A DNA stretch of 64,000 nt from positions 124,001 to 188,000 of the IMG/VR virus record IMGVR_UViG_3300025930_000007; one strand, written 5' to 3'. This document shows, piece by piece, positions 14,494 through 63,304 of this stretch. The notes under the pieces were generated by a model. It was not told the origin of the DNA and made no database searches. It saw nothing but the letters and a program-made list of their open reading frames with translations. The position numbers and the translations under genes were made by a program. Position 1 is the first letter of the stretch. Every line of letters begins with the position of its first letter.

Positions 14494-15330
14494 ATGGTGA
14501 TGGGACCTTGCGGACCGTGTGCTCCAGGAGCAACGCCATTCGGCGGCCCGGCCAGCGGCCTTTGGCCATCCGGCTCGGGCATAGGACCTGCGGCTGGGCC
14601 TGTGGGCCCGATCATCTCGCCAACACCTACTCCTACTCCTATTCCGATTCCGACTCCTATCGGTCCTGCCCCTGTAGAGCTCGGCCTGGCGGCCTTCTTC
14701 AAGATCCTCGCAGAAACGGCGATCACGAACGTTCCGACGTCCAACATCATCGGCAACGTCGGCCTCAGCCCGGCCGCTGCCTCGAACATTACCGGGTTCG
14801 CGCTCGTGCTGGACGGCTCCGGCCAGTTCGCGACATCCTCTCAGGTCGCGTCTCCCGGCAAGGTCTACGCGGCCGACTACGCGCCTCCGACGCCGGCCAT
14901 GCTCACAGCCGCGGTCCTGGCGATGCAGACGGCATATACCGATGCTTCCCTCAGGCCCGCAGACTTCACGAACGTGAACGGCGGCAGTCTCGGAGGTCTT
15001 ACGCTTTCGCCGGGCACCTACAAGTTCACGTCGAACGTCAATATCGCATCGGATCTCACTCTCGCCGGTGGTCCGAATGATACCTGGATCTTCCAGGTCG
15101 ATGGGACCTTCGACATGACGGGTGGTGCGGACATCATCCTGACCGGCGGCGCTCAGAAGCAGAATGTCGTCTGGCAGGTCGCCGGCGCGACGACCATCGG
15201 ACCGGGCTCGATCTTCCAGGGGACGCTGCTCGATCAGACGAGCATCGCGCTGCAGACGGGCGCCGAGGCTCACGGCAAGCTGTATGCCCAGAGCGCGGTG
15301 ACGCTGGACAACAACTTCGTCGACGGCTAA
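14494..15330 (+). CDS. ice-binding-like protein (DUF3494/IBP-1) on a Pro/Thr stalk
   Basis: VELG..F.ILA.T.IT.VP.S.I.GNVGLSPAAA, GKVYAADYAPPTP, AYTDA, LGGLTLSPGTYKF, WIFQV, NVVWQVAG, AQSAVTLD. Confidence 0.92.
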   Translation: MVMGPCGPCAPGATPFGGPASGLWPSGSGIGPAAGPVGPIISPTPTPTPIPIPTPIGPAPVELGLAAFFKILAETAITNVPTSNIIGNVGLSPAAASNITGFALVLDGSGQFATSSQVASPGKVYAADYAPPTPAMLTAAVLAMQTAYTDASLRPADFTNVNGGSLGGLTLSPGTYKFTSNVNIASDLTLAGGPNDTWIFQVDGTFDMTGGADIILTGGAQKQNVVWQVAGATTIGPGSIFQGTLLDQTSIALQTGAEAHGKLYAQSAVTLDNNFVDG

Positions 15331-15332
15331 CG

Positions 15333-15671
15333 ATGGCAAAAAGAAGCCTTGAATTCGGGATGCAGCCGCCCAAGGGCACCAAGGTGGCCTGGGGCGCGCG
15401 GGCTATCTTCAAGCCCATCTCCAAGAATCCCATGATCGACATCCTGTGGGATCGGCAGGATGCCTTCGGTGACAAGGAAGAGCGTGAAGATCTGGTGGAA
15501 TGGGTCAGGAAATCCGGAATGCCCTGGCTGAATCAGGAAATGGAAGACAAAGCCAGCTACTCTATCAGCAGATCCCATGAAGTCTTCCGGCACGAGGATG
15601 GGGATTATGTCCTCGAGGCCAGTCCGAAGGGAAGTGCTGGGTATCTCTATATCGGAGCTTGGAAGGAGTAG
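15333..15671 (+). CDS. hypothetical phage protein
   Basis: 112-aa ORF in operon. Confidence 0.65.
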   Translation: MAKRSLEFGMQPPKGTKVAWGARAIFKPISKNPMIDILWDRQDAFGDKEEREDLVEWVRKSGMPWLNQEMEDKASYSISRSHEVFRHEDGDYVLEASPKGSAGYLYIGAWKE

Positions 15672-15674
15672 ATC

Positions 15675-15935
15675 ATGTTTGGAATCTTCTCCGCGCCTCA
15701 CATATCGATTGGCTGGTCCGGCGGCGGCGCCGGCGGCGGCCCTGATACCGGCGCCGGGATTCCTCCTGGCGGCTTCCCCGGCATCTACCCAGGTGCAGGC
15801 GTCTCCAACTCCGGCTGGGCCGGCCTCACGGAGTTCCAGCAAGAGCAGCTCAAGAAAGACTGCGTCAAGAAGGGCACGTGCGTCCTCGGGCCTCCCGCAA
15901 GCTTCCTGGGATCCAAGCCTAAGGGCTGGCGCTAA
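15675..15935 (+). CDS. Gly-rich small protein
   Basis: AAGGAG SD; 86 aa. Confidence 0.55.
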   Translation: MFGIFSAPHISIGWSGGGAGGGPDTGAGIPPGGFPGIYPGAGVSNSGWAGLTEFQQEQLKKDCVKKGTCVLGPPASFLGSKPKGWR

Positions 15936-15947
15936 GGCCGCCGAGAT

Positions 15948-16331
15948 GTGTTCACGATCGCCAAGCTCATAGACACAGATCCCGACCGCGCAACCTTCCT
16001 GACGACGAATCTGTTCGTATTCGACGAGGAGTCCAAGCGCCTTACGGTCATCATGGTTTTCGTTGATCGTAGAGAGATCCTTTGGGCGAAATTGCTTGGC
16101 TGTGGACCAGGGCCTAAAACCTTCCGGGAAGTATTCCAAGAGCTTCAAAGGGGAATGGAAGAAGCTCCGGATAATACACGGTTGATCTACAAAGAACATA
16201 TCCGCGACATCAACGATGTCGAAGACTTCGCAATCGAGCATTTCAAAGAGTACGTCGAAGGGATTTCCATCATGGGGACCCATGAGGACATCGCGGAGAT
16301 CCTGCACCGCTGCTTCAAGATCCCTGTCTGA
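15948..16331 (+). CDS. hypothetical protein, possibly related to 23297 and 23683
   Basis: GTG-TTC start, similar length and N-terminal pattern. Confidence 0.6.
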   Translation: MFTIAKLIDTDPDRATFLTTNLFVFDEESKRLTVIMVFVDRREILWAKLLGCGPGPKTFREVFQELQRGMEEAPDNTRLIYKEHIRDINDVEDFAIEHFKEYVEGISIMGTHEDIAEILHRCFKIPV

Positions 16332-16337
16332 GACAAC

Positions 16338-16367
16338 TTGACTTTAGCGGTAGCCACGGTTTACCAT
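16338..16367 (+). promoter_or_regulatory. sigma70-like promoter with inverted GTAAAC box
   Basis: TTGACT-18-TACCAT; CACGGTTTAC overlaps the -10. Confidence 0.6.
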
Positions 16368-16375
16368 AGCAGGGA

Positions 16376-20802: not shown

Positions 20803-20966
20803 GGCTACCCGCGGCGTATTAAGGCTGACGTAAGAGATCAGAACCTCTTGAAGTCTGAGGGATAGACGGTATGATTAATCCGTTGGCCCACCATCCACTC
20901 CCCCTGGATGGCCACGAAGTTCGAAGGACCAGTTTCCGCCCATCGCGATCTAAGGGGGTTATTCTC

Positions 20967-22575: not shown

Positions 22576-23289
22576 ATGCGTGTCGTGAACGTCGATTACA
22601 GCCGGAACGGCCATCAGCCCAAGAGGATGGGCCAGTACGGGCCGTATCAGACGACCTTTACGGTCCCTCGAGAGGCCGCCTTCCGGATCATCGATGAGAA
22701 CGGCTTTTATAACGTGAATGCCGGGAAGAAGTTCCCCTACACGATCACCAATATCGTCACGGCAGACGGCATTCCTCTGGGCCTCGCTCCAATCCAGAGC
22801 ACGGCGCTTTCCGGAGAGGACTCCGTCGTCCGGGTGCAGATCCCGATCACGCAGGGCCAAGGGCAACTGAGCATCGGCGATCAGCCGGTGGACGCCGTTC
22901 TCAGCCTGTACGGGATTAACGGCAATATCCAGTATCCGATCTTCGAGAATCGGAAGATCCGCTTCACCGTGACGCCGGCAAGCGCTTTCCCTCTCAACCT
23001 GCAGGCCATCTACGAAAAATACGACGCGGACAAGTACGCGGCCGAAACCGCCGCCCAGGACGAGATCATGGCGCAGAAGTACTCCCAGATGATCGCAAGT
23101 GAGGCCCAGGCCAAGGCGGCCGCGGACAAGGCCAAGGCTGCTGCCGATGCCGCAGCCGCGAAGAAGCAGGCGGCTGATGATGCGATCGCGGCCGCGACCA
23201 ATGAACAGGCCTCCAGGAACAAGATGATCTGGACGGTTGGAGGAATTGCGGCCCTGGGCTTGCTGAGCTATCTCGCCTTCGTAGACTAG
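22576..23289 (+). CDS. tail-anchored protein with MGQ leader and Ala-rich coiled coil
   Basis: KRMGQ; AKAAADKAKAAADAAAAKK; IWTVGGIAALGLLSYLAF. Confidence 0.7.
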   Translation: MRVVNVDYSRNGHQPKRMGQYGPYQTTFTVPREAAFRIIDENGFYNVNAGKKFPYTITNIVTADGIPLGLAPIQSTALSGEDSVVRVQIPITQGQGQLSIGDQPVDAVLSLYGINGNIQYPIFENRKIRFTVTPASAFPLNLQAIYEKYDADKYAAETAAQDEIMAQKYSQMIASEAQAKAAADKAKAAADAAAAKKQAADDAIAAATNEQASRNKMIWTVGGIAALGLLSYLAFVD

Positions 23290-24057: not shown

Positions 24058-24563
24058 AGATCGCCGGCTGGCATGGCGGCCCAAGAAATCTGGTCGGGCC
24101 TCTTAGAGGTACCTGTTCCTCCGAAGGATGCGGCGTCTATCTTGCCGACACAAAAGCCTTCGCCGCCCACTTCGGATATCCCCATCGCGTGATAGCGTCG
24201 ATCAGGAATCCACTGGTCGTTGACGGAGAGAACATGCCGGCGCTCGAGGGGAACCTGCATCTTGGATTCTTCAGGGATAGTGCGCCGGATACCACCTGGA
24301 TGCGAGCGAACTACTATGCCTCTGAGAAGGCCGAGCTCCTGGATGTGGATCCGGACCGCGATCGCCAGCTTTATTTCGAACGTCTCTTTAGCCGGTTCGG
24401 GCCCGCACTCAATGCTTATCTACGCAAACGCGGCTATGATTCCATCTTGTTCAAGCTGCAGGTCGATCGCCTGCCGGAGCGCTTCAGCCAGGATCCCAAA
24501 CTCGCCGGGAAAGAAGTCCAGTGGTGGGTTGTGTTCGATTCGGCAAAAGTGCAGCTTGACTAG
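24054..24563 (+). CDS. ADP-ribosyltransferase-like protein (ART-PolyVal-like)
   Basis: WHGG, GVYLA, AAHFG, IRNPLVVD, GYDSI, VVFDS pattern. Confidence 0.6.
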   Translation: MKIAGWHGGPRNLVGPLRGTCSSEGCGVYLADTKAFAAHFGYPHRVIASIRNPLVVDGENMPALEGNLHLGFFRDSAPDTTWMRANYYASEKAELLDVDPDRDRQLYFERLFSRFGPALNAYLRKRGYDSILFKLQVDRLPERFSQDPKLAGKEVQWWVVFDSAKVQLD

Positions 24564-25276
24564 CGCGACGCGATGATGCTCACGGTCGTCGGGACGTGGT
24601 AGTCCGCCGGCATGTCTGGGCCCGGTTTCAGAACCTCAATGGACTTGAAACCTCCGTCCTGCAGGAGCAAGATCAGCGCGGTGGCGGTGGGAACAGTCCT
24701 CAGATCGGAAGATAGATTCGACCGGATCGTGGTAGGCTCACCCTTCGTCCGGGCCCGGAGATGGAAACAGGGTTTGTCATCGACGGCCACTTCCCCATCG
24801 ATGACGAGGATCTCCTTGGTGATCTTCATCGCCTTGCGAAGGACGTGAATCGGATCTGTCAGATGGTAGTGCACTCCCAGCATGAGCGTGACATCGGGAT
24901 CCGCGCCAGTCCACCCATCCTCGTCCTCGAGGTGCGCTTTCATAAAGACGCAGTTATTGATCCCCAAGGTGTAGGCGGCCGCCTCCGCTTCCTGGATGAA
25001 GGCCTCTGAGGAATCCAGGCCCAGGACATGCGCTGCTCCGGATCTCGCAGCTTCCATGCTCCAATAACCTTGGCAGCAGCCGAGATCAAGAACCTTCTTT
25101 CCGGCGAGAGATCCTCCGAAATGGTTGAGGAGCGGCTGGAAGAAGTGAGCCTTGCGCTTCTCGACACGATCCGCCCAGCCAGGCCGCGTGGGGACCGTTT
25201 CTCCCCACGGGAATTCGAAGCGGTAGTGCCAGTAGAGAGCCTTCTCGAGGATCTTGCGGGCTTCGTCCGGGCTCAT
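24560..25276 (-). CDS. class I SAM-dependent methyltransferase (CmoB/DUF1698-like)
   Basis: WHYRFEF, GKKVLDLGCCQGYWS, VLGLD, GVHYHLTDP. Confidence 0.85.
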   Translation of the reverse strand: MSPDEARKILEKALYWHYRFEFPWGETVPTRPGWADRVEKRKAHFFQPLLNHFGGSLAGKKVLDLGCCQGYWSMEAARSGAAHVLGLDSSEAFIQEAEAAAYTLGINNCVFMKAHLEDEDGWTGADPDVTLMLGVHYHLTDPIHVLRKAMKITKEILVIDGEVAVDDKPCFHLRARTKGEPTTIRSNLSSDLRTVPTATALILLLQDGGFKSIEVLKPGPDMPADYHVPTTVSIIASR

Positions 25277-25974
25277 ATCCTTGTCGGAGTGACCTTCACC
25301 GTAAACTTGGGTTTCTCCGGCTCGGGCTTGGGAGGGCTTTCTGGTACCAGTTTGGCGGTTGAATCAGCGTACCAGATGCTCGACCGGTGATTGACGGCAT
25401 AGGATTCCGCGGGCGGATTCGTAATCAGCATGGGCTTCTTGGGGAAGGCCTTATATTCCTCGTGGGTATAAGGGATGAAGGTCTTCCGGTCGAAGACGCG
25501 CACGCCGGGTTCTCCCATGACATGCTTCGTGAAAAAGGGAGGTCCCATCGCGTTCCAGGGTTCCGGCTTGAAATTCTTTCGGCAATCCCAGACGATCTTC
25601 TGCAGGAGTTTATGGCCTTTGGTGACTCCGATGACCGCATTGCTGTAGACCTTCAGGTCCTCGCGCTGCCAGCAGACGAAGAAATCGACGCCGTTCACCA
25701 ACATGTCGATGTTCTTAAGGCATTCCATGTCGGTATCGAGATAGACGCCGCCTTCCCGGTAGAGGATCTCGTAGCGGGCGATGTCCGAGCGCTGGGCCAA
25801 GCTCGTGCATTTCGGGAAGATATCCCGGTTGTTCAGCTTGCTGCATTCCTTTTCCGTCCAGAGCTTCATCGTCCAGGTCGGATGCAGCTTCATCCAGGAC
25901 TCGCCCCATTTCGAGAAGTGGAAGGGCATGGGCTTACCGCCCAGCCAGATTCGATGGAAGATTTTCGGGATCAT
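25273..25974 (-). CDS. glycosyltransferase, GT32/Och1-like (DXD)
   Basis: MIPKIFHRIWLG, SDIARYEILYREGGVYLDTDMECLK, GPPFFT. Confidence 0.9.
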   Translation of the reverse strand: MIPKIFHRIWLGGKPMPFHFSKWGESWMKLHPTWTMKLWTEKECSKLNNRDIFPKCTSLAQRSDIARYEILYREGGVYLDTDMECLKNIDMLVNGVDFFVCWQREDLKVYSNAVIGVTKGHKLLQKIVWDCRKNFKPEPWNAMGPPFFTKHVMGEPGVRVFDRKTFIPYTHEEYKAFPKKPMLITNPPAESYAVNHRSSIWYADSTAKLVPESPPKPEPEKPKFTVKVTPTRI

Positions 25975-26744
25975 CTATGCGAGGCCTCCAGAAGCTGGGC
26001 GACGACGGGCAGGAAATGAAAGGAATGGGTGATCTCGGATTCAACCTTCCCCTCGGCCTTGAGAGCGGCCGCGCGGCGTTCGTAGCGGAGCAGCCGGCCC
26101 GGATCCGGCCAGCGCAGGGGTGAAGAGGCGGGAAAGATCGTTTCGGTTTTCAGTGCTGCAGGAGATGACAGCAACAATGGTCCGAGGGTTTCCCTCAGGA
26201 TGCTGTAGGTCTCGCGCAGCGCGGATGTTTTTAGCTCGGTCTCCTCGGCCGAGAGGGCGAATTCCTGCCGGGGCTGGCCATCCGGAACGGTCTGGACGCC
26301 ATAGCTCTCCTTCCCTTGGGGCTTCTGGTAGAGAAGCGGTACCTCGTAAGTCCCCGCCCAGGGCGCGTCGTCCGCGCTGCCGACGATCGCCAAGGTAAGA
26401 TCGTGGACGGGGTTATAGAACTCGACGGCGTCGCAGAGGATCTGCTCGGGCTTCGTATTCTTGAGCAGATTCCGAACCTGATGGGCGATGTGGTGGAAGT
26501 AGTCGCTGTTCACATGGAGAAGCCCGTCGTAGAAGGCCTGCTCCGGATGCGAAAGGAAGATCGCGTTGTCCAGGAGGCCGATCGACCGGAGGCCCTTTCT
26601 GGTTTCGTCTTCCCTGGCCTTGCCGCCGCCGTCGGTCAGGAAGATGATGAAGGGCCGCACTTTTTTGAGGAGCGCGAGGATTGCGATCTCGTGATTGGGA
26701 TGGCTGAAGACCACCACGGTCTTCTGTTTAAGGTCGAAGGACAT
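25971..26744 (-). CDS. PIG-L/LmbE-like deacetylase-fold protein
   Basis: VVFSHPNHE (HPDDE variant), FLTDGG...R..E, NPVHD. Confidence 0.6.
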   Translation of the reverse strand: MSFDLKQKTVVVFSHPNHEIAILALLKKVRPFIIFLTDGGGKAREDETRKGLRSIGLLDNAIFLSHPEQAFYDGLLHVNSDYFHHIAHQVRNLLKNTKPEQILCDAVEFYNPVHDLTLAIVGSADDAPWAGTYEVPLLYQKPQGKESYGVQTVPDGQPRQEFALSAEETELKTSALRETYSILRETLGPLLLSSPAALKTETIFPASSPLRWPDPGRLLRYERRAAALKAEGKVESEITHSFHFLPVVAQLLEASHR

Positions 26745-26772
26745 TTTAGGTTCCGCCCGTATCTCCTGAATG

Positions 26773-26801
26773 AAGATACGCGGTTTACCTGAAAAAGTCC
26801 A
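26773..26801 (-). promoter_or_regulatory. sigma70-like promoter with GTAAACCGCG box
   Basis: TGGACT-17-TATCTT upstream of the glycosylation cluster. Confidence 0.55.
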
Positions 26802-26802
26802 G

Positions 26803-27723
26803 CTATGAGCAGCAGAACTCCGTCGTCGGAGGGAGCACGCCGGACGTCACGAAGACGCTGGTGACGCTGGCGGAATCCGGGAAGACGTTCCCCGAACCCA
26901 TGAAGATAGCTGCCACATCCCCCGGCATGGTGCCGAAGTTGATGCCGCCGATGAGCAGGAACGTCAAGGGAACGACCACACCATCCAGGTAAAGCGTCGG
27001 AACTCCCCCGGCGCTGACCGTCAGATGGACCTCGTGCGTTCCATTGTTGGGAGTCCAGGAGCCGCTGTAGACGGAGGCCCCGACGCTCGGCCCGATCGAC
27101 AGGAACAGCGTTCCGTTGTCGACCATGCGAAGGTCGAATCCATAGGTGGCGCCGGTGCCCACCAGGAAGAACTGATAGAACGAGAAGCCTCCGCCGGTCG
27201 GTGCAGGATATTCCGTGAAGGTCGCCTGATACGTGATGTTGTTGACGCTGGGGAAACTGATCGGCTTGGTGGCGGCCGGGACGTCGTTGTTCGCCGCGGA
27301 ATCCATGTGCATGACGCCCGGAGTAAAAGAGACGGAGCCTCCCTTGCCGCCGAAAGCATTGCTGAAGGTCCACCCGCAGACGGGACCTGGAGTCACCGCG
27401 TTGATGGGCCCTCCGGTGCAAGGGAAACAGTCGGCCAGGATCGAGGCCGTTACGCAGGAAGGGGTCGGAGGAGGCGTTGGAGTGGGAGTCGGCGCCGGCG
27501 GAGTGGGGTTATTGGAAGCCCACAGGCCGCTCGCGGGGCCCGACGTCGGAGACGAGAGGGGAGTTCCCATCCTGGCGATCGGTGCGACGAAGGCGACGAC
27601 CTGTTTGGGGATCGGGCCCTTGAAGCATTGAAGGGAAGGCATGCCGCGCGGAGTGGTCGGCTTTGTGACGATGCAGTTGGGCCGACGAGGCGGCGGCGGT
27701 GGCGGGTTCCCCGGCTTGTTCAT
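26803..27723 (-). CDS. GPASGLW/Pro-Thr stalk protein with lectin/LamG-like beta-rich head, paralog of 62441-63304
   Basis: GPASGLW, PTPTPTPPPTPSC, ADCF, WTP..GTH.V, LYLDGVVVPLT, FCC terminus; start MNKPG after GGAGG. Confidence 0.7.
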   Translation of the reverse strand: MNKPGNPPPPPPRRPNCIVTKPTTPRGMPSLQCFKGPIPKQVVAFVAPIARMGTPLSSPTSGPASGLWASNNPTPPAPTPTPTPPPTPSCVTASILADCFPCTGGPINAVTPGPVCGWTFSNAFGGKGGSVSFTPGVMHMDSAANNDVPAATKPISFPSVNNITYQATFTEYPAPTGGGFSFYQFFLVGTGATYGFDLRMVDNGTLFLSIGPSVGASVYSGSWTPNNGTHEVHLTVSAGGVPTLYLDGVVVPLTFLLIGGINFGTMPGDVAAIFMGSGNVFPDSASVTSVFVTSGVLPPTTEFCCS

Positions 27724-27773
27724 AAATTCCTCCGACCTTCTGAGTATAACCGTTGGGCGGGAGGAAGAAAACG

Positions 27774-28133
27774 TTACTTTCTTTTGTCGACGAAGCCGAG
27801 CAGCCTGGTCGGGATTGAATGGAAACCGCACTGTTCGACACCATTCGAGCGCCAGGTATGGAGGACGCTGGGTGAGATATTGCCGTCTGGGTCGATCTTG
27901 TGACCTTGAGGCTCGGTCTCTCCACGTTTGCGGTAGAGCGTCATAAGCTGCGTGCAGTCAGGGCAGCGTGCGTAGAGCATGAGGCAATAGCTGTCGTCGA
28001 GATCGGCGAATTCCCCGCTGCGGTCGATCCAGGCCCATTCGCCGGGTTTCATCTGCTCGATCTGGGCATCAGGAAGGAAGCCATCCCTGGCGGCCGCGGA
28101 TAGCTTGAACTCGTAATATCCTTGGGTCGGCAT
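27774..28133 (-). CDS. DUF6527-like protein
   Basis: CPDC ... HKIDPDGNISPSVL ... CGFH. Confidence 0.5.
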   Translation of the reverse strand: MPTQGYYEFKLSAAARDGFLPDAQIEQMKPGEWAWIDRSGEFADLDDSYCLMLYARCPDCTQLMTLYRKRGETEPQGHKIDPDGNISPSVLHTWRSNGVEQCGFHSIPTRLLGFVDKRK

Positions 28134-28407
28134 TTCAGGCCTTCAGCTTGATCGGGACCAGCAATCTGACAATGTGGTAGTCGTGCATCAAGGCCAGATG
28201 CAGGATCGCCTTCTTCCACTCTGCGTCCTTTTCATGCTTCGATGCGTCCGGAGCGGCATCGTAGATCACTTCCTTGCAGAGAATGCAGGTGATGCGCCGG
28301 CAGAATTGGCCGATACGTTCCGTCTGGAGATCGTGGTCGGCGTTGAAGGGGCGGTGAAGAGGCATCACCTTTACGATATCTCGTTTATCCGGAAAGTCCA
28401 GAGCCGC

Positions 28408-28914
28408 CTACTCTTGGATTTTCAACATCTTCCGGAGCTCGGGCGTGAGCGGGAGGATGTTCCGGTAGATGATCTCGCCGCTGGGGATGATCAGGAACTC
28501 ACGGAGATGGCGCTTGGTGATGATCATGAGCACCCAGACGCCGGTGCGGCGATATTCCTTCTGGAAGGCCTCATCCTCTTCGGGCAGCGGCGTATACTGG
28601 GCCCAGAAGTTCGGCGCCGTGTGGGCGGCCTTCTCGTCGCCGGAAAAGATCAGGGTCGTATTGCGCTCATCGACCGAGAGCGTGTAGGTCCCGTTCTTGA
28701 CGTCCAGATTGATCTTCTTCAAAGGATCGAAGGTCTGAGCGATGATCGTTTCCATGTCCTGCGGAGAGGGGTGATAGTCCACGAGGAACACGGGAAGGGT
28801 TTCCGTGCGGGCGCTGTTGGGTCCCCTCATCCGGGTGGTCAAGGTGCCCACCAGAATGTGAGTATCCTCTCCCTCGGTCATGTTCTTGTAGAAGGGATCG
28901 TCGGTCAGGCCCAT
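28408..28914 (-). CDS. hypothetical protein
   Basis: 168-aa ORF abutting the upstream gene. Confidence 0.6.
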   Translation of the reverse strand: MGLTDDPFYKNMTEGEDTHILVGTLTTRMRGPNSARTETLPVFLVDYHPSPQDMETIIAQTFDPLKKINLDVKNGTYTLSVDERNTTLIFSGDEKAAHTAPNFWAQYTPLPEEDEAFQKEYRRTGVWVLMIITKRHLREFLIIPSGEIIYRNILPLTPELRKMLKIQE

Positions 28915-29523
28915 TCAGTTCCCCTTAGCACACCCGACATTGGAAAGCTTCTCACTGACGTTGTCCAGACTCTTCTTGGTGGTTTGGATCATCGCTTTGA
29001 GTTGATGGACATTCTCCTTCACCTTGGTGCGCTCAGAAATGCGCTTGGAGACCCAAGAGCTGAAGGCAAGTTGTTTCCGCTCGAGCGTGATTCCCTCGAA
29101 CTGGCACCAGACTTCGCCGCTGTCCCCCAAGCTGATCGTCGGGAACTTGGTTCCGTCCTTGAGGGTCATCTCGCCGATGGTAAAGTCCGGCTGCTGCAGC
29201 GCCCCGACTTCCACGATCACGCGCTCCAGCTCCTGAAGGCGTTTTTCATAGGTGGAGAGCTCGGCAGCGAGGCGCTTACGCCGGCTGGCCTGCCGTTCGG
29301 CTCCCTGGATGAGCCTGAAGTCGAGGGAGTAGGACTTCGCGCAGCTTCCGCCGACCACGGCTTCCTGTCCGTCTTCGAGCAGCACGGTCCAGTGGATCTC
29401 ATGATCCCGGCCGCACCGGCTGCAGGTGTTCGGATTCCCGGATCCGGGGATGGGGACGAAGGAATCGCCCTGCTCCTCGTACTCGCGGGTGTCCACGACG
29501 GAGATGATCTTGACGATCTTCAT
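28915..29523 (-). CDS. hypothetical Zn-ribbon plus coiled-coil protein
   Basis: CSRCGR...VGGSC. Confidence 0.6.
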   Translation of the reverse strand: MKIVKIISVVDTREYEEQGDSFVPIPGSGNPNTCSRCGRDHEIHWTVLLEDGQEAVVGGSCAKSYSLDFRLIQGAERQASRRKRLAAELSTYEKRLQELERVIVEVGALQQPDFTIGEMTLKDGTKFPTISLGDSGEVWCQFEGITLERKQLAFSSWVSKRISERTKVKENVHQLKAMIQTTKKSLDNVSEKLSNVGCAKGN

Positions 29524-29527
29524 CGGC

Positions 29528-29854
29528 CTACCCGACCTGACAGATCTTCTTGCAGAATCCGCAGTGGTAGTGGTGCTTGCGGCAGTCTCCGCACTCCCCG
29601 TCATCATGGAAGATGACGTCGTCGGAGGACTTCCCGCAACGGCACCAGAGATCGGCCTCGCGCTGGAGGGCTTTCTGGGTTGCCGGGCTGATGACGGCCG
29701 CGCCCTTGCAGATCACGCAGGTGATCTTCAGGGACATCCTCTCGACCGGTTTCCCGGGCGAGATCGTCGACGTCTCGATGGTCTGGATGCCGGAGCCCTT
29801 GCACGTCGGGCACTGGAGCATCTTCGGGGGCTTGGGACCCGTGTGAATCTTCAT
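29528..29854 (-). CDS. Cys-rich protein with DnaJ-type CxxCxGxG zinc motifs
   Basis: CPTCKGSG, CVICKG, CGDC..HHYHCGFC; AAGGAG SD. Confidence 0.65.
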   Translation of the reverse strand: MKIHTGPKPPKMLQCPTCKGSGIQTIETSTISPGKPVERMSLKITCVICKGAAVISPATQKALQREADLWCRCGKSSDDVIFHDDGECGDCRKHHYHCGFCKKICQVG

Positions 29855-29883
29855 ACCGCCTCTCCTTCCTATCGAATGGTCTA

Positions 29884-29913
29884 AGTATATGCTTGAGTAT
29901 ATACTGATGTCAA
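29884..29913 (-). promoter_or_regulatory. near-consensus sigma70 promoter
   Basis: TTGACA-18-TATACT with palindrome AGTATATACT in the spacer. Confidence 0.65.
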
Positions 29914-29940
29914 TAGGAAAGTGGAGTGAAGAAATGCGAT

Positions 29941-30363
29941 TTAAGCTTCGAAGTGCCAGAGGTCCTGGAGCTTCATCGCCACGAAGGCCACCAGGCGGTC
30001 GCGGTTCTGGTACTCGTTCATCCGGGCGCCGTCGGGGATCTTCCCGGTCCAGTCCTTGCCGAAGATGCGCTCCACCAGAGCCTCGGTTACTTTCCCCGTC
30101 GCGCCCAGGTTCCCGGCGATCGCCCGGACCTCCTTCTCGCTGATCGGAAGGCGGGACTTGGGCTTTCCGGCGACCAGGTGTTCGATGTGCTGCTCGATCC
30201 CGTCGAGGAGGACGTCGCGATCCAGGTTCCGGATCTCCTTCATGCACGCCTCGCAATACGGGATCGAGGCGGTCTCGGAGCTCGGGCCGATCTTGAGCGT
30301 GACATTGACCGACGAGATGTCGATTCGAGGCATCGGCTTTTTGCAGGCGAAGCATTCGGACAT
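29941..30363 (-). CDS. hypothetical Zn-binding protein
   Basis: CFAC...YCEAC; AAGGAG SD. Confidence 0.6.
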   Translation of the reverse strand: MSECFACKKPMPRIDISSVNVTLKIGPSSETASIPYCEACMKEIRNLDRDVLLDGIEQHIEHLVAGKPKSRLPISEKEVRAIAGNLGATGKVTEALVERIFGKDWTGKIPDGARMNEYQNRDRLVAFVAMKLQDLWHFEA

Positions 30364-41777: not shown

Positions 41778-44700
41778 TGCGAAACCCCAGCTTTCGGCGT
41801 AACTCCAGAGCCCGAAGTTGATCTATGCTTGGAGAGGCTCGAGAGGTCGGGTAATCTTGGTCTCCTCCTTGCGAGCCTTGATGGCCTTCTCGAGGCACTC
41901 GTTGCAGAGAAGGACAATGAAGACCACTTTGAGGAGCTTGCCGCACTCGGCGCAATGGACCGGAGGCTCGAACATCTTCTCTCTCCAGGGCACAGGATGC
42001 GAGGTTTAAAGTCCAATCCCGCCCCAAAGTTCCGATCATCCAGAGCCATGAAATCCTCAGGCGTTACGCGACTTCTCATTCTTTTCCACTTTCCGCACTT
42101 CCGAGCAGCAACTTGCCAGACATTCGCAGTCCGGAATGGTGCAAAACCGCACCTCCAGCTTGTCGGGAGCATCGATGTGCGGCGACCAGGTCTCGGGCTT
42201 GTGGTTGACATGCCCGCCCAGCTTCCTTTCGCACCACTCGCGGATGTCCCGGATGCCGATGTAGCTCACCCCGCCCACCACAAACTCCGGCAGATGCCCG
42301 CCGGATGCCGGCGCGCAGGGGATGTCCCCATAGGCCTTCTTCACGACCTCGAGGGCTTCGCGGCTGTCCCGGGTGTCATCCAGGTATAGGATCATGGATC
42401 AAACCTCCAGGACCTCGACCCAGTCCGGCTTCTGCTTCTTCCCGGTCTCGGGACAGAAGTAGGTCGCTTCCTCGATCAGCTTCTCGGAGCCCGCGTGGAT
42501 CAGGTAGGGAAGCATCCCGACCAGCAGCTTCTCGCAATGCGGACACTTGGGCAGCTTCATTTGTCCTCCAGCCTGCGAACACTGCCGAGATCCCGGGCAT
42601 CCCAGGAACTCCCATCCTTGTCGACCTTGATCCAGGGCACCGAAGGATCATCCTTGGCGAAACCGGTGATGGTTCCCTCACAGGACCAGGTCTTTCCGCT
42701 CACCCAGACCCGGTCGCCGATCTTCGGAATCCATTCCACTTTGGGCTTCGGCTTGGGAGGCTCCGCGGGCACCAGCTTGAATCCGATCTTCTCGAGGACC
42801 TGCCAGTCCTCCTCGCTCAAGGGCGGAATGGCCTCCACCGGAAGCCCCATGGCCTTGCGGCAATCCCGCATCGCGATCGGAATCCAGGCCTTCATCGCCT
42901 TCTGCGGATCCGCGGCATGAAGCACCGCATCGAGGGTGCCGTGGACCTCATGAATCACCTTCTTGAGCTCCGCGATCTCCTCCTGGAAGGCTTTCCGCTC
43001 GGCCTCGACCTTGGAGGCGATCCATTCGCGGCCCTGAAGGGTCGGCTTCGCGGCCGATACCTTCACCTCGCGGTCCTTCGCCGCGACGATGGCATGGTTG
43101 TCCACCGCGCATTCATCGGCACCCTGGGCGCCCTTGTAGCAGCCGCAGGTATTGCACCAGTAGTTCATTTGGATTTCTCGGCGGGAAGCACGTAGATGCC
43201 GCCCAGTTCGGTCCCGATCAGAACATAGATCATGGCGCCGGTGTCGGGATCAGTCCGCCGCATGACCAGCCCCGAGCGGATGCCGTTCGACACGGTCCCC
43301 AGATTGGTCCAGGGCCCGGGGTTCACCACGGCATCTTCCCGGGTATGGGGCTTCGCCCTGCTCAGGACGATGGCCGGCACGACGATCAGACTCGTGATGA
43401 TGATGGTGATCACCACGAGCAGGATGGTGCTTCCTGAGATCTTCATTTCGAATCCTTCCTTCTGCGAAGCTCGGTGAGCAGGCGATCGACTCCGGAATAC
43501 CACTGCCGCCGCTTCGCCGGAGACTGGAGATCAGGGTCGGTGCAAAGCTCTTTCGAAGCCTTCTTGATCAGCCGCTCGCGCTTCTTGTCATCACCGGCCT
43601 TGCTCATATCTTCCCCTCCCGTTTCCAGCGGGCCTCGGTCTCGGCGGCGAGCTTTTCATCGGCCGCCTTCCGCTCAGGACTGCGGTTATCGATGTCGATC
43701 CACATCTGGTGGGGGATGTTCCAGATCATGCCGGGACGCGGAGGACACTTCGGGTTGCGACGGTCGACCGGAGCATCCTTCACCTTCAGGAAGTTCTCAG
43801 CCGAAATTTTTCCGGTGGCATCGCAAGCCACACAGGGAAGCGGACCGCCCCACTGGGCCCAAGGCCAGCTCCCGGAGCCGAAACAACGGGGGCAGATCTT
43901 GTCCGCGCAGCACTCCTGGTCGCACTTCTGCCAAGCCCTGCAGACGGACTCCAGGCAATACCATCCATGAGTCCGATAGTCCTGATTGAGGTATTTCATC
44001 GGACGGCCGCATTTGGGACAGTTCATGGACGCCGATCTCCTCCCTGGTAAACCAGTTCTACCTGTTCCTTTGCGCCTGTTCCAGAGTTTTCTACGGCCGC
44101 CGAAGGAACCAGATCGAAGCGATCAGGCCTCCGACCACTATCAGGGCCACGACGAACATCGCGACCAGTCCAGTCAAGACTCCGAGACAGCCGGACTTTG
44201 TCGCAAGAAATTGTTGGGCTTCTGGATTCCTCACTCCACTCTCTCCCATTTGTTCGAAGCATGAAGTATCCGGAAGGTAAGCCGGATGTCTCTCTGAGGA
44301 TACACCTGATTTCCAACGCGCTCCTCGATCCAGACCCCGGTCGCATCCTTCTCGGTCTTCACGATCTGGTCGCGCTGGATCTCGGCCAGGGCCTTGGATT
44401 TTGTGATCGAACGGAGATCGACATTCTCGAGGCCCCCTTCGGGGTTCGTTTTCCTCACCCAGACCAGCCAGACCGCGAATTCCTTCCAGTCGCGCAGGGG
44501 CCAGGGCTTGTTTGGATCGAAGGGCATCTTTACTTCCCGAATCCAATGGCCATCAAAAGATCACGTCCTATCTCCGATACCCCGCCCATGAGCGTCGCAT
44601 CATGCCTCTGGGGTTTCGTCCATTGGGACCGCTCCATGATGAGCGCCCACCAGAAGATTTCGTAGCAGAAGTAGTAGATCCCCAGGAGCAGGACCAGAGG

Positions 44701-60033: not shown

Positions 60034-60298
60034 CAGTCCTTCCTTCCGACTTCCGTCCAGGTGCCGCCTGTCACGAGCCCTTCCGGCACGGTGGAGATCG
60101 GCGGCGCCGCCTTCTTCCTCTTGGCCGGCTTCTTCCGGACGAGCGGCTTGTTCGCGATCACGCAGAGGGAAGATCCCATGGAACGGTAGTACTCCCGGTT
60201 CTTCTTGGCCCAGCGCTCGCCTTCCGCCCGGGTCTCCGTCTTGTGGACCGTCCGGAGTGGACAATTCGCCAGTACCAGGAATTTTGCTTCAGGCTTTT

Positions 60299-60724: not shown

Positions 60725-61362
60725 GCCGTCTCCTTCACCAGCCGAAGAGGCTGCACCACAAGCTTGCGCTGATTGGCCGGGGTTCCCGCACCGGCCCAGA
60801 AGTACTCGCCGCCTTCGTTGAAGGCGTGGATGAAGCCGTTGTTGTCGCTGTATTCGGACTTGAAGCCGACGACGTCTCCGAATAGGAACGGTCCTGTTGG
60901 GCATTCCGCCAAGGTCGTCGGGTCGCCATCAGGAACGAGCTCGACTTTCATTTGGCCTCCACGCAGTTCGATTGATACCGCTGGTCACAGGCTTCCTTGT
61001 CCTTGCATTCCCAATGGCTGATCAGTAAATCTTTCACGAAGCAGATCCTTTCTTCCCAGCAACCGTCAGGCCTTCCGTGGCGATCTGCTTCTGGATCGCA
61101 AGGCCCAGCGCAATGTCTTTCCGACGCTGCATCTTGTCGCGCCCCTCGAAGTAGTAGGCCCGTGCGGCCGCGTAGATCGCTTCCAGGCGCAGGATGTACG
61201 GGCAGGTAACCGAATGCATCGCGAGCAATCCGCACTCGCCGCAAGGGCGCCGGTCCCGGACGACGGCATGGCAGGCCTCGCAGAGGCCGGACCAGACCGC
61301 GGGCTGTGGGCAGAGATTGCACCGCTCGCCACCATAGGCCCACTGCACCGTCTTGGGATCCT

Positions 61363-61992
61363 TCATGAATCCACGATCTTCTTTCCTTCGATCGGACCGT
61401 ATTGGGCCAGCACCTTGTCGATCCAAGTCTGCGTCTTGGCCTTAGCCATGACGAGCTTGTGGCCGCTGCCGCTCTTCCCCACCACGCCCTCGAACGTCAC
61501 CTTGGGCGAGAGATCGTCCTTCCCCTCCCGGATCCGGTCGACGAAGCCGCGGGTCCAGTTGAAGCAGCCGAGGAAAGGTGCGATCCGAAGATGCTTGAAG
61601 TTGTCGAGGAACTCTTTGGGACCCAGGATGCCCTTCTTGTTGGGGCAGGCATCGAACAGAGTCAAGGTCTTTGGATCCTGGGGATCATGCTTTCCGGCAA
61701 AGGAATTCTTTCCCCAGAACTCCATGAACACGATCAGATGATCCCAGCGGTTCTTCTTGATGACCTCGTTCAGCTTCTCCTGCCAGAACTCGAGGAACAG
61801 CGGAATAGCCAAGCCGAAATCAGGATCGGTGTGATCGAACAGGCGATTGCGAGTGCCGAACTTGTGCCAGCCCTGCTTCCGGCTGTATTCGAAGCGCAGA
61901 TTGGAACCGTCGAGCTTGTCGAAGACGTAGGCAGCATCCATTTCGCGGAACTTCTGCCCGTTGCTGGATTGAATTGAAGGGTAAGGCTTCAC
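61363..61992 (-). CDS. ATP-dependent RNA ligase-like nucleotidyltransferase
   Basis: YPSI, KLDGSN (motif I), GTRN, MEFWG, LFD, EGVV, KAK. Confidence 0.8.
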   Translation of the reverse strand: MKPYPSIQSSNGQKFREMDAAYVFDKLDGSNLRFEYSRKQGWHKFGTRNRLFDHTDPDFGLAIPLFLEFWQEKLNEVIKKNRWDHLIVFMEFWGKNSFAGKHDPQDPKTLTLFDACPNKKGILGPKEFLDNFKHLRIAPFLGCFNWTRGFVDRIREGKDDLSPKVTFEGVVGKSGSGHKLVMAKAKTQTWIDKVLAQYGPIEGKKIVDS

Positions 61993-61999
61993 GGGCCTA

Positions 62000-62028
62000 A
62001 TGGTAGACCGCGTTTACCTCTGGGTCAA
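62000..62028 (-). promoter_or_regulatory. promoter with GTAAACGCGG box, probably leaderless
   Basis: TTGACC-17-TACCAT, GTG 7 nt downstream. Confidence 0.6.
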
Positions 62029-62045
62029 GATAAAAATGACGCGAG

Positions 62046-62432
62046 CTACCAACCCATTTTCTCGCGCTGACGCTTGTTCAAGATGTCCTGCCAGGCGCTC
62101 GGAGGCATCCAGAAGACGATATGTACGCCGGCGTTGATGGACTCGAAGTTCACTTGATCCCATCCGTTGTGCTTTAGGACTCTCATCACCTTTTCCCAGT
62201 TCTTGTGTTCGTTTCTTACCGTGCTCCAAGGATCTTGAATCCAGCCGTATTCCGTCCCGACGATGACGACTCCAGGATCTGGATCATGCCAGCCTTGAGC
62301 GACACCATCATCCGACCAGGAGGGACGGACTGACTCCAGATATTCCTTGCGAGCGGGAGGTCCATAAACTTGAACAAACGCCTCGCGGACGGCATCCGCG
62401 AATTGATTGGCGATCTGGTCGATTTTGCTCAT
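62046..62432 (-). CDS. hypothetical protein
   Basis: 128-aa ORF. Confidence 0.6.
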   Translation of the reverse strand: MSKIDQIANQFADAVREAFVQVYGPPARKEYLESVRPSWSDDGVAQGWHDPDPGVVIVGTEYGWIQDPWSTVRNEHKNWEKVMRVLKHNGWDQVNFESINAGVHIVFWMPPSAWQDILNKRQREKMGW

Positions 62433-62440
62433 TGTGTCCC

Positions 62441-63304
62441 TCAGGGACAGCAGAAGGCCGTGTTGTCGGGGATGTTCCCGTTCGCGAAGAAGATGCTATC
62501 GAAGGAGCCCTTCCCGTCGGCCTCATCGTTGTCCGTAATGATGATATCCATAACGGAAGGAGCTCCGGTGACAGGTCCAGGGACCAAAGGCGTGAGCGGG
62601 ACATTCACGCCGTCCAACGTCAGAGTAAGGTTGCCCAGGCCATCACCCTTTAAGATGACCGAGTGCGTCGCCCCTTGCGCCGGAGTCCATGTGAACGTAT
62701 CGAGAGTCGCCAGGTCTCCGGCAAAGCCAGTTCCATCACCCGTAAACTGGACGAGAGCCACCGCGTTACCGGCGCCGTTGAAAGCTCCGATGATATAGAC
62801 CTTGTTGAAGGTCGGGGTAAAGTTGACCTCGGTGAACTCAAACCTCAACGTCCACGTCCCCGCCGGAGTCAGGACGGATTTTCTGATCTCGCCCTGAGGG
62901 AGTCCGCTGAAGAGTGGACCGCTCCCGAGGTAGACCTTCTGGTCCGCGAAGACAACGGTGCCTGGTGGAGTTTCCACGCTCCAGCCGACGTTTCCCGTGG
63001 TAAAGCAATCGGCGAAGAGGTCGGCATTCACGCAGACAGGAGTAGGAGGCGGTGTCGGCGTAGGCGCAGGCGAAGGAGTAGGCGCAGGAGTCCCATTGTT
63101 TGCCCAAAGGCCAGAGGCCGGACCTCCGGTGGGCGAGAGACTCGGACGAGCCGTGGGCGTGGGTGCTGCCACGTTGAAGCAAACCATCTGAGGAGGCCGA
63201 TTAGGTTGCACGGGCGGCTTCACCGTGCATATGGCCTTCGGTGGTCGAACAACAGAGGGCGGCGCGGTCGGACGGGCAGGGCCCGGACGAGGCTTCCCCA
63301 TCAT
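62441..63304 (-). CDS. GPASGLW/Pro-Thr stalk protein with lectin/LamG-like head, paralog of 26803-27723
   Basis: GGPASGLW, PTPPPTPVC, ADCF, WTP..GATHSV, LTLDGVNVPLT, FCC terminus. Confidence 0.7.
   Translation of the reverse strand: MMGKPRPGPARPTAPPSVVRPPKAICTVKPPVQPNRPPQMVCFNVAAPTPTARPSLSPTGGPASGLWANNGTPAPTPSPAPTPTPPPTPVCVNADLFADCFTTGNVGWSVETPPGTVVFADQKVYLGSGPLFSGLPQGEIRKSVLTPAGTWTLRFEFTEVNFTPTFNKVYIIGAFNGAGNAVALVQFTGDGTGFAGDLATLDTFTWTPAQGATHSVILKGDGLGNLTLTLDGVNVPLTPLVPGPVTGAPSVMDIIITDNDEADGKGSFDSIFFANGNIPDNTAFCCP

What the first reader, a model, noticed from the sequence alone, without database searches (positions are those of the whole stretch)
14494..63304. GPASGLW motif plus Pro/Thr stalk plus variable head: a modular display family
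Seen: three dispersed genes (14494 +, 26803 -, 62441 -) share an N-terminal Cys pair, the exact heptapeptide GPASGLW and a PTPTP stalk. One head is DUF3494; the other two are related beta-rich heads ending in FCC. None has a signal peptide or TM. Inference: GPASGLW attaches interchangeable adhesin heads to the particle, as decoration proteins or fibres.
Basis: partly seen in the sequence, partly recalled or inferred. Interest (0 to 1): 0.7.

Follow-up and report, generated by a model that had tools for sequence, protein, structure and literature searches.

The report
Tethered lectin family with shared N-terminal tag
A huge soil virus carries five small genes built the same way (a short conserved N-terminal tag, a flexible stalk and one of two kinds of sugar-binding-type head), which look like tethered adhesins, but what the tag attaches to is still unknown.

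Summary
The exact heptapeptide GPASGLW occurs in three window ORFs (14494-15330 +, 26803-27723 -, 62441-63304 -) and in a fourth outside the window; 0.004 are expected by chance. A fifth paralogue reads GPASGIS and lies in 83 kb missing from this contig, which a near-identical record supplies. The genome is about 349 kb.

One head is Ice_binding/DUF3494. The others are ConA/LamG-like jelly rolls closed by conserved cysteines (...ADCF...FCC).

The conserved core is wider than reported: [ST]P[FT]GGPASG[LI][WFS], usually after a Cys pair (CGPC in the short form). Trp, the Cys pair and the Pro/Thr stalk are each dispensable in some members.

The tag is kept by protein-level selection: half of the identical residues use different codons. 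It is more alike between paralogues of one genome than between orthologues. It is swapped between head types. An exhaustive profile search of 1.84 billion proteins finds it only in this phage lineage, and only with these two heads.

So "modular display family" is supported. "Attached to the particle" is untested, because no capsid, portal, terminase or tail gene could be recognised, so no co-fold was possible. "Fibres" is unlikely.

My best reading is a docking peptide that tethers lectin heads to a phage-encoded structure.

The parts
14494..15330 (+). Member A (278 aa): N-tag aa 1-27 (MVMGPCGPCAPGATPFGGPASGLWPSG), Gly/Pro then Pro/Thr/Ile stalk aa 28-61, Ice_binding (DUF3494) head aa 62-278. 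No Cys outside the tag.
14545..14565 (+). GPASGLW heptapeptide of A
26803..27723 (-). Member B (306 aa from the ATG at 27723; the ORF extends to a GTG at 27831): basic Pro-rich N-terminus, Cys17 and Cys33, SPTSGPASGLWASN (motif nt 27540-27520), PT stalk aa 73-88, ConA-like head aa 89-306 with 6 Cys, ends FCCS.
62441..63304 (-). Member C (287 aa): basic Pro-rich N-terminus, Cys26 and Cys42 in a predicted beta-hairpin, SPTGGPASGLWANN (motif nt 63124-63104), PT stalk aa 72-89, ConA/LamG-like jelly-roll head aa 90-287 (pLDDT above 90) with 4 Cys, ends FCCP.
13786..14466 (+). Tail-anchored protein (226 aa) directly upstream of A: conserved N-peptide, three-helix bundle, Pro/Thr-rich linker, C-terminal TM helix. 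It stays adjacent to the Ice_binding member in relatives even where the gene order flips. Candidate partner, untested.
13708..13745 (+). Promoter-like TACAAT followed by the hairpin GTCTTCCC[TCCCCC]GGGAAGGC upstream of the 13786-A operon. One copy of a recurrent element also found before the collagen-like fibre genes, the tail-anchored-protein clusters and the operon that holds C.
24560..26744 (-). Genes directly downstream of B on the same strand: unknown 257-aa protein (25971-26744), GT32-type glycosyltransferase with DXD motif (25273-25974) and SAM methyltransferase (24560-25276). Possible modifiers of the stalk; inference only.
7009..8100 (+). Two tail-anchored thioredoxin-fold proteins with active sites CPYS (7009-7554) and CPHC, the DsbA-type motif (7564-8100). 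They are conserved 4-6 kb upstream of the Ice_binding member in relatives. Possible oxidoreductases for the Cys pairs; inference only.
63304..63606 (-). Acidic 100-aa ORF whose stop overlaps the start of C (ATGA), so the two are probably translationally coupled. Function unknown.

Best explanation
These are five paralogous tethered-lectin proteins of a huge (about 349 kb) uncultured rhizosphere or soil phage.

Each has an extracellular-type binding head. Four are ConA/LamG-like jelly rolls stapled by two or three disulfides. One is an Ice_binding/DUF3494 domain. The head hangs on a flexible linker (Pro/Thr-rich, or Ser/Ala/Gly-rich) from a 25-70 residue N-terminal module. The core of that module, [ST]P[FT]GGPASG[LI][WFS], acts as a short linear docking peptide, usually braced by a Cys pair.

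The peptide fixes all paralogues of one genome to the same phage-encoded receptor site. The most likely site is on the virion surface, or on one of the phage's many tail-anchored membrane proteins. The heads are thereby displayed to bind polysaccharide (host capsule, EPS or biofilm matrix).

Shown: the family, its module boundaries, the head folds, purifying selection on the tag, its within-genome coherence, its exchange between head types, and its restriction to this lineage.

Inferred: that the tag docks to something, what it docks to, virion location, disulfide state, glycosylation of the stalk, and the ligands.
For: 1. Four exact copies against 0.004 expected, plus a fifth variant.
2. The tag is held by selection on the protein, not by DNA copying. 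The Ser codon is AGC in two copies and TCT in two. In A versus D, 10 of 19 identical residues use different codons. In the tandem pair of relative L062, 23 of 45 do.
3. The tag follows the genome and the head follows orthology. The L062 tandem paralogues are 73% identical in the tag and 44% in the rest. A versus D is 84% in the tag. B against its L062 orthologue is 40% in the tag and 49% in the head. This is what a shared, co-evolving partner predicts.
4. Tag swapping: P0027, P0028, P0031 and D carry the CGPC-type tag of the Ice_binding proteins on ConA-like heads.
5. The head of C is modelled at pLDDT above 90. It matches ConA-like lectins, CBMs and LamG domains in PDB, BFVD and AFDB at probability 1.0, including phage minor tail proteins and the CBM2 of the phage J-1 Dit protein.
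6. Cys counts are even in all but two of the 37 members that keep the tag region (the exceptions are L056 and P0029). The tag holds 2 in 32 of the 37; the heads hold 0, 4 or 6, placed at both ends of the head. This fits an oxidised, extracellular working state, yet there is no signal peptide. For a phage protein that points to release at lysis, that is, on or with the particle.
7. The tag region is predicted disordered (pLDDT below 50) with F, L and W as its only bulky residues, as in docking motifs.
8. The operons holding A and C carry the same promoter-plus-hairpin element as the collagen-like fibre genes.
9. Weak: two small metatranscriptome contigs lie on the 5' part of A and on a nearby small ORF, while 6 kb around C is silent.
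Against: - No partner has been identified.
- No capsid, portal, terminase, sheath or baseplate gene was recognised among about 135 ORFs scanned, including the recovered 83 kb. The existence and type of the 'particle' are therefore not established from sequence.
- The five genes are dispersed among accessory genes and tRNAs, not in a structural block.
- None hits any PHROG family.
- The promoter and hairpin class also precedes genes on the DNA-metabolism side, so it does not mark structural genes only.
- Trp, the Cys pair and the stalk are each dispensable in some members.
- The trimer prediction gave no answer and counts neither way.
Confidence: 0.4

Rival explanations
1. The tag is a recognition element for phage-encoded modifying enzymes (a 'leader'), not an anchor. 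It recruits glycosyltransferases to O-glycosylate the adjacent Ser/Thr/Pro stalk, or thiol oxidoreductases to form the disulfides. The finished lectins are then released as soluble proteins at lysis.
For: - The genome carries an unusually large glycosylation set: a 1169-aa multi-GT protein and a 97-110 kb cluster with GT2, GT4, GT11, a GDP-sugar dehydratase-like enzyme and a rhamnosyl O-methyltransferase.
- B sits directly upstream of a GT32 glycosyltransferase and a methyltransferase.
- Two thioredoxins, one with a CPHC site, are conserved near A.
- The only composition-level look-alikes of the N-terminal 90 residues are mucin-like or PT-repeat proteins, and their scores are below significance.
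Against: - D and E keep the tag but have no Pro/Thr stalk.
- A has no Cys outside the tag, so it has no disulfides to make in its head.
- Enzyme recognition does not by itself explain why tags are more alike within a genome than between orthologues, unless the enzyme co-evolves.
- No Erv1, VKOR or DsbB oxidant is present to drive the thioredoxins.
Confidence: 0.2
2. The tag is a targeting or export signal that takes the lectins to the envelope of the infected cell, possibly through the phage's tail-anchored membrane proteins. They would act there, for example in superinfection exclusion or in remodelling of surface polysaccharide, rather than on virions.
For: - About 25 phage proteins have a single C-terminal TM helix.
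- One of them is the conserved neighbour of A, and the pair stays together in a closely syntenic relative and in one where the order flips.
- The family genes lie among moron-like accessory genes.
Against: - There is no hydrophobic or twin-arginine signal, and no similarity to a known secretion signal.
- B, C, D and E have no tail-anchored neighbour.
- No bacterial genome among 185,579 species carries the motif in a real gene, so no host system is known to read it.
Confidence: 0.15
3. The tag is a self-association module. Cys-linked N-termini bundle several heads, possibly different paralogues, into multivalent bouquets or short fibres.
For: - Within-genome similarity of the tags would also follow from co-assembly of paralogues.
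- The Cys pair is placed where interchain disulfides could form.
- The same genome uses a shared N-terminal anchor plus collagen repeats for a separate fibre family.
Against: - There is no coiled coil, collagen repeat or beta-helix shaft.
- Cys-less members exist.
- The trimer prediction gave a score of 0.00, which the tool says must not be read either way.
- ConA-like and Ice_binding domains are usually monomeric (general knowledge).
Confidence: 0.1

Closest known systems
Phage capsid and tail decoration proteins that display Ig-like or carbohydrate-binding domains (T4 Hoc, T5 pb10, CBM insertions in 'evolved' Dit proteins of Lactobacillus and lactococcal phages)
   Same: A small accessory protein or module that exposes a lectin-type or adhesin-type beta-sandwich on a linker. 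The ConA-like head matches the CBM2 of the phage J-1 Dit protein and phage minor tail proteins at fold level.
   Different: There is no sequence or profile similarity to any of them, with no PHROG hit. The anchor here is a peptide of about 25 residues rather than a folded capsid-binding domain. Virion location is not shown.
Adenovirus fibre tail motif (FNPVYPY) docking into the penton base, and the conserved N-terminal anchors of phage tail fibres and tailspikes with exchangeable C-terminal receptor-binding parts (recalled from the literature, not tested here)
   Same: A short, conserved N-terminal segment is shared by proteins with different distal heads. The anchor tracks the virus and the head varies.
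   Different: Those proteins are trimeric with shafts. These have no shaft or trimerisation element, and the receptor site is unknown.
Bacterial glycoside hydrolase and CBM architecture with Pro/Thr linkers, and cellulosome dockerin-cohesin display (general knowledge)
   Same: Pro/Thr-rich linkers, which are commonly O-glycosylated, join a binding module to the rest of the protein. The beta-sandwich has cysteines at both of its ends. The logic is modular plug-in display.
   Different: There is no catalytic partner domain, no signal peptide and no dockerin fold. The tag is unrelated in sequence to any solved chain.
Ice-binding-like proteins, DUF3494 (Pfam PF11999)
   Same: The head of A is a full-length, high-scoring member: 229 bits, profile positions 1-207 of 208.
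   Different: Bacterial members normally carry a signal peptide (general knowledge). A carries the Cys-pair and GPASGLW tag and a stalk instead, and is phage-encoded. Ice binding itself is not implied.

Membership tests
Ice_binding / DUF3494 (PF11999), head of A | Match to the family HMM above the gathering score over the whole domain | tested here: met
   E = 4.7e-68, 229.4 bits against a cut-off of 28.7; aa 71-276 match profile positions 1-207 of 208. Fifteen orthologues carry the same Pfam label.
Ice_binding / DUF3494 (PF11999), head of A | Secreted through an N-terminal signal peptide, as in typical bacterial members | tested here: not met
   No hydrophobic stretch in the first 40 residues. 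Hydropathy scan only; no dedicated predictor was available.
Ice_binding / DUF3494 (PF11999), head of A | Ice-binding or adhesin activity | not testable with these tools
   Needs a biochemical assay.
Concanavalin A-like lectin/glucanase (LamG-like jelly roll) superfamily, heads of B, C, D and E | Jelly-roll beta-sandwich fold | tested here: met
   AF2 model of C: residues 90-287 at pLDDT above 90, all beta. Foldseek probability 1.0 against sialidase CBM, GH16 glucanases, legume lectins, LamG and DUF1080 domains, E = 1e-7 to 4e-9. TM-score by query is 0.4-0.5 with a third of the query disordered.
Concanavalin A-like lectin/glucanase (LamG-like jelly roll) superfamily, heads of B, C, D and E | Sequence membership in a curated family (for example Laminin_G_3, DUF1080) | tested here: not met
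   No Pfam hit at E up to 0.1. The PDB profile search gave only E = 0.3 hits to CBMs.
Concanavalin A-like lectin/glucanase (LamG-like jelly roll) superfamily, heads of B, C, D and E | Carbohydrate or metal binding site | not tested
Known phage decoration, fibre or tail protein families | Profile match to a PHROG or Pfam structural family | tested here: not met
   None of A-E or five neighbouring genes hits any PHROG family. No Pfam structural family was found.
Known phage decoration, fibre or tail protein families | Gene located in a head or tail morphogenesis module | tested here: not met
   The neighbours are GNAT, glycosyltransferase, methyltransferases, RNA ligase, tRNAs and unknown small ORFs. 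No morphogenesis module could be recognised anywhere in the genome.
Known phage decoration, fibre or tail protein families | Physical presence in the virion, or binding to the capsid protein | not testable with these tools
   The capsid protein is not identified and there are no proteomic data.
Trimeric fibre | Trimerisation element (coiled coil, collagen repeat, beta-helix shaft) or predicted homotrimer | tested here: inconclusive
   No such element is visible in the sequence or model. The complex prediction of three copies of C returned 'no answer'.
Classical secretion substrates (Sec, Tat, lipoprotein) | N-terminal hydrophobic h-region, twin arginine or lipobox | tested here: not met
   Sequence inspection and hydropathy scan.

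The most novel reading that the evidence does not exclude
The family may be one visible part of an unusual virion or infection architecture in a roughly 349 kb bacterial virus. The features that point this way are:
- no recognisable HK97-type capsid, portal, terminase or tail genes;
- about 25 tail-anchored membrane proteins, including DsbA-motif (CPHC) thioredoxins;
- a glycosylation arsenal on the scale of giant viruses;
- collagen-like fibres;
- disulfide-stapled lectins that lack signal peptides.

On this reading the virus folds, oxidises and glycosylates extracellular-type proteins in the cytoplasm and plugs them, through the GGPASG tag, onto a membrane-associated or glycan-coated outer layer. 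That organisation is known from giant viruses of eukaryotes, not from phages.
Probability: 0.1. Interest if true: 0.85.

Novelty: new variant of a known kind. Interest (0 to 1): 0.5.

Why it matters
If the tag is a plug-in anchor, it is a very small (about 25 residue), portable address label by which a huge phage mounts different sugar-binding heads on one site. That would help explain how soil phages adhere to biofilm or host polysaccharide. It could also serve as a display handle.

The tag, the FCC-ended ConA-like head family and the neighbouring tail-anchored protein all lack database families and literature, so they mark a lineage whose structural biology is unexplored. The surrounding genome is itself worth a dedicated look: 349 kb, no recognisable virion genes, many tail-anchored proteins and a heavy glycosylation load.

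The case stays moderate because the heads are common folds, modular anchor-linker-head design is familiar in phages, and the key claim (attachment to the particle) remains untested.

Tried and rejected
- **Chance or DNA repeat.** Rejected. Expectation is 0.004 copies, and synonymous sites are scrambled, including AGC against TCT for Ser.
- **Motif widespread in viruses or hosts.** Rejected. Degenerate DNA scans of IMG/VR, the JGI metagenomes and 185,579 species genomes gave real hits only in this lineage; all others were out of frame or chance. An exhaustive profile search of 1.84 billion proteins gave 5 hits, all family members.
- **Other head types.** None found.
- **Capsid co-fold.** Could not be done. 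Pfam searches of the genome for HK97 and NCLDV capsids, three terminase families, sheath and A32 ATPase were negative or sub-threshold. PHROG or Pfam scans of about 135 ORFs found only replication, repair, RNA-ligase, methylase, glycosylation and similar functions. Two guesses turned out to be PolX-like and ADP-ribosyltransferase-like. I then recovered the 83 kb missing from the contig out of the sister record, and it holds replication genes, not head genes.
- **Stop-codon recoding as the reason for missing structural genes.** An ORF-length comparison was uninformative in this GC-rich genome.
- **Cytoplasmic disulfide pathway.** No Erv1, VKOR or DsbB was found.
- **Homotrimer prediction.** No answer.
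- **Look-alikes of the tag.** Protein-language-model search, fold search and PDB profile search all found nothing.
- **Literature.** Nothing on the motif and nothing useful on DUF3494 in phages.
- **Closest isolated phage.** None; the helicase is only 27-32% identical to anything cultured.
- **Eukaryote-style N-myristoylation, double-glycine leader, WXG or GLW-amide-like readings of the tag.** Considered from the sequence and dropped, because the consensus positions do not fit or are not conserved among orthologues.

Full report
**1. The observation**

- A (14494-15330 +, 278 aa) begins MVMGPCGPCAPGATPFGGPASGLWPSG. A Gly/Pro and Pro/Thr/Ile stalk follows, then a full-length Ice_binding/DUF3494 domain (PF11999, E = 4.7e-68).
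- B is best read from the ATG at 27723, which has a GGAGGA ribosome site (26803-27723 -, 306 aa).
- C is 62441-63304 (-), 287 aa.
- B and C each have a basic, proline-rich N-terminus with two cysteines, then SPT[SG]GPASGLWA[SN]N, a PTPTP-type stalk, and a beta-rich head ending FCCS or FCCP.
- The two heads are about 32% identical.

A six-frame scan of the whole contig (266,490 bp; the window is 124,001-188,000) finds the exact heptapeptide four times, always in these ORFs plus a fourth, D (genome 81124-81852 +). The expectation is 0.0036.

D joins the short tag of A (MLPGKCGCPGNPATPFGGPASGLWPSG) to a B/C-type head ending FCCPDGTPSR, and has no Pro/Thr stalk.

**2. The genome is larger than the contig**

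The record is an IMG/VR virus contig called linear and 92% complete. A near-identical 236 kb record (G001) overlaps it and continues for 82.9 kb of sequence absent from this contig. It then re-enters at base 1, so the genome is circular or circularly permuted and about 349.4 kb long.

The extra piece encodes a fifth member, E (273 aa). Its tag is ...KCPPPFIRPIPQGPCILPGFVTPFGGPASGISPLGG, its linker is Ser/Gly-rich, and its ConA-type head ends NFCCP. The tryptophan is therefore not invariant.

**3. What the heads are**

An AlphaFold2 model of C, built with 13 family sequences, gives an all-beta head (residues 90-287, pLDDT above 90). The Cys pair sits in a weakly predicted beta-hairpin (pLDDT 65-70), and the GPASGLW region and stalk are disordered.

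Foldseek places the head in the concanavalin A-like lectin/glucanase (LamG-like) jelly rolls. Matches include:
- a sialidase carbohydrate-binding module;
- GH16 glucanases and legume lectins;
- the lectin-like subdomain of clostridial neurotoxin binding domains (fold level only);
- the CBM2 of the phage J-1 Dit protein and phage minor tail proteins;
- LamG and DUF1080 domains.

Sequence identities are 10-20%, and no Pfam, PHROG or PDB sequence family is hit.

The heads carry conserved cysteines at both ends (C-x8-C-F ... F-C-C). Cys counts are 0, 4 or 6 in the heads and 2 in the tag in nearly all members. This fits disulfide stapling of proteins that work outside the cell.

**4. What the tag is**

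Homologues are few and all metagenomic.
- A search with C found 11 clusters.
- A search restricted to residues 1-40 of A found 15 Ice_binding orthologues that keep GPCGPC[AS]P-x(2-4)-PFGGPASGLWPSG almost unchanged. It also found two proteins (P0027, P0028) with the same tag on ConA-like heads.
- A 36-position profile of the tag, run with HMMER against 1.84 billion representative proteins, returned five hits, all ConA-like family members.
- Degenerate DNA scans of IMG/VR, the JGI metagenomes and one genome for each of 185,579 prokaryote species gave true hits only in this phage lineage.

The conserved core is [ST]P[FT]GGPASG[LI][WFS]. Variants seen are GLF, GPF, SPW, GLS and GIS. Two independent sequences start MRPG[FI][IV]TPFGG and lack the Cys pair. 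Only two head folds were ever found with the tag.

**5. Evidence that the tag is functional and partner-constrained**

The four copies use different synonymous codons, including AGC and TCT for the serine. Half of the identical residues differ in codon between A and D, and between the tandem paralogues of relative L062. The similarity is therefore maintained on the protein, not by recent copying.

In L062 a B-like and a C-like gene lie in tandem. Their tags are 73% identical and the rest is 44% identical. Across genomes the orthologous heads are more alike (49-58%) than their tags (40-47%).

The tag thus tracks the genome and the head tracks orthology. This is expected if all paralogues of one phage must fit one co-evolving site, or must fit each other.

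**6. Context**

The family genes are dispersed.
- A follows, by 27 nt, a tail-anchored protein (13786-14466).
- That pair is kept in a closely syntenic relative and, with the order flipped, in NCBI contig JBAIGQ010000139.1. In a third, more distant relative the partner's neighbour is an unidentified 248-aa protein.
- A model of the tail-anchored protein shows a conserved disordered N-peptide, a confident three-helix bundle, a Pro/Thr-rich linker and a TM helix. It has no fold match.
- Two tail-anchored thioredoxins (CPYS and CPHC) lie 6 kb upstream of A and are conserved in relatives.
- B heads an operon with an unknown protein, a GT32 glycosyltransferase and a methyltransferase.
- C is translationally coupled to an acidic 100-aa ORF and lies near an RNA ligase.
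- D lies among about 43 tRNA genes.
- E follows a GNAT gene.

The genome carries a very large glycosylation set, about 25 tail-anchored proteins, and a second modular family of collagen-like fibres with a shared N-terminal anchor.

A recurrent element is a -10-like hexamer followed by a 5-9 bp hairpin with a [CT]CCCCC loop. It precedes the fibre genes, the tail-anchored clusters, the 13786-A operon and the operon holding C. There are 12 instances against a mean of 2.6 in shuffles. It also precedes some genes on the DNA-metabolism side.

The phage is present in at least 19 rhizosphere or soil DNA runs. One metatranscriptome holds two tiny contigs, one on the 5' part of A, while 6 kb around C is silent. 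This is weak evidence of transcription.

**7. The test that could not be done**

I could not find one.
- Pfam models searched against the genome for capsids, terminases, sheath and A32 ATPase were negative.
- Scans of about 135 ORFs, including all large ones and the recovered 83 kb, gave helicases, primase, PolX, ligases, methylases, integrase, HNH nucleases, an RF1-like factor, glycosylation enzymes and others, but no morphogenesis protein.
- No cultured phage is close.

I used the single complex-prediction job on a homotrimer of C. It returned 'no answer', which the tool says must not be counted either way.

**8. Interpretation**

The most economical reading is a family of tethered lectins. 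A short docking peptide, often braced by a Cys pair, fixes heads of two folds through a flexible linker to one phage-encoded site. The linker is possibly O-glycosylated. The cysteine pattern and the lack of export signals argue that the proteins act after lysis, that is, on or with the particle.

I give this 0.4. Three alternatives remain open and are not mutually exclusive:
- the tag is a recognition element for the phage's modifying enzymes (0.2);
- the tag is a targeting signal to the envelope of the infected cell through tail-anchored proteins (0.15);
- the tag is a self-association module (0.1).

'Fibre' in the strict sense is unlikely, because there is no shaft.

**9. Novelty and score**

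Anchor-linker-head design and ConA-like or Ig-like display domains are familiar in phages, so this is a new variant of a known kind. The tag, the FCC-ended head family and the neighbouring tail-anchored protein are undescribed and lineage-restricted. The host genome is odd enough that a more radical architecture cannot be excluded (probability about 0.1). Interest is 0.5.

Noticed in passing
whole contig; G001 (IMGVR_UViG_3300005544_000020) 153,091-236,008 = loci L094-L098: The contig is not 92% complete. A near-identical 236 kb record bridges its two ends and adds 82.9 kb of sequence absent here, giving a circular or permuted genome of about 349.4 kb. The extra part holds helicases, a primase, a PP2C phosphatase, a fatty-acid desaturase and the fifth family member.
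   Followed up: yes
genome 4109-22383 and 86487-87257 (outside the window; loci L002, L003, L007): A second modular family of collagen-like fibre proteins. They share the N-terminal anchor MAIRLPDGSIQM...PPPAWPFVSGGGGGG, then long G-X-Y repeats, then different heads (beta-helix-like and others). Repeat-bearing paralogues follow them.
   Followed up: partly
window 7009-7554 and 7564-8100: Two paralogous thioredoxin-fold proteins, each with a Pro/Ala/Ser-rich linker and a C-terminal TM helix. Their active sites are CPYS and CPHC (the DsbA motif). No Erv1, VKOR or DsbB is present in the genome. The pair is conserved in relatives.
   Followed up: partly
genome-wide; densest at genome 32-53 kb; in the window also 13786-14466, 22576-23289 and 42305-43195: About 25 predicted proteins have a single C-terminal transmembrane helix (tail-anchored topology), many of them in runs of small paralogues. 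That is unusual for a phage.
   Followed up: partly
window 540-585 and 13708-13745; genome 4026, 8032, 17806, 32351, 48137, 188216, 223302, 231301, 237655, 244922: A recurrent intergenic element: a -10-like hexamer (TAGAAT, TACAAT, TATAAT or TAAACT) 8-16 nt before a 5-9 bp hairpin with a [CT]CCCCC loop. There are 12 instances against a mean of 2.6 in shuffles. It is probably a phage promoter with a 5'-UTR stem-loop, and it is also present upstream of the Ice_binding gene in a relative (L099).
   Followed up: partly
window 4454-5407 (-): A class-I peptide chain release factor gene (PCRF and RF-1 domains), conserved in relatives. No suppressor tRNA was called among about 43 tRNA genes, and an ORF-length test for stop-codon recoding was uninformative.
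   Followed up: partly
genome 51.6-84 kb (loci L005-L007): An array of about 43 tRNA genes covering most amino acids, plus one odd call with a four-base anticodon. Family member D sits 82 nt after a tRNA-Pro gene.
   Followed up: no
genome 97-110 kb (locus L008) and 26596-30105 (locus L003): A large glycan-synthesis cluster: GT2, a GDP-mannose-dehydratase-like enzyme, GT4, a GT11 fucosyltransferase-like enzyme, GT2 fused to a rhamnosyl O-methyltransferase, and GT2 with TPR repeats. There is also a 1169-aa protein with several glycosyltransferase domains.
   Followed up: partly
locus L062 (Ga0247746_1001380), 2052-3810: In one relative a B-like and a C-like gene lie in tandem with nearly the same N-terminal module. 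This suggests the dispersed copies in this genome arose by tandem duplication followed by relocation.
   Followed up: yes
window 3099-4031, 6277-6687; genome 122010-123155 and 241691-242773: Other annotations met on the way: a DUF6745 protein, an LPD25 (polyvalent-protein) domain, an ADP-ribosyltransferase-like protein and a PolX-family polymerase-like protein.
   Followed up: no
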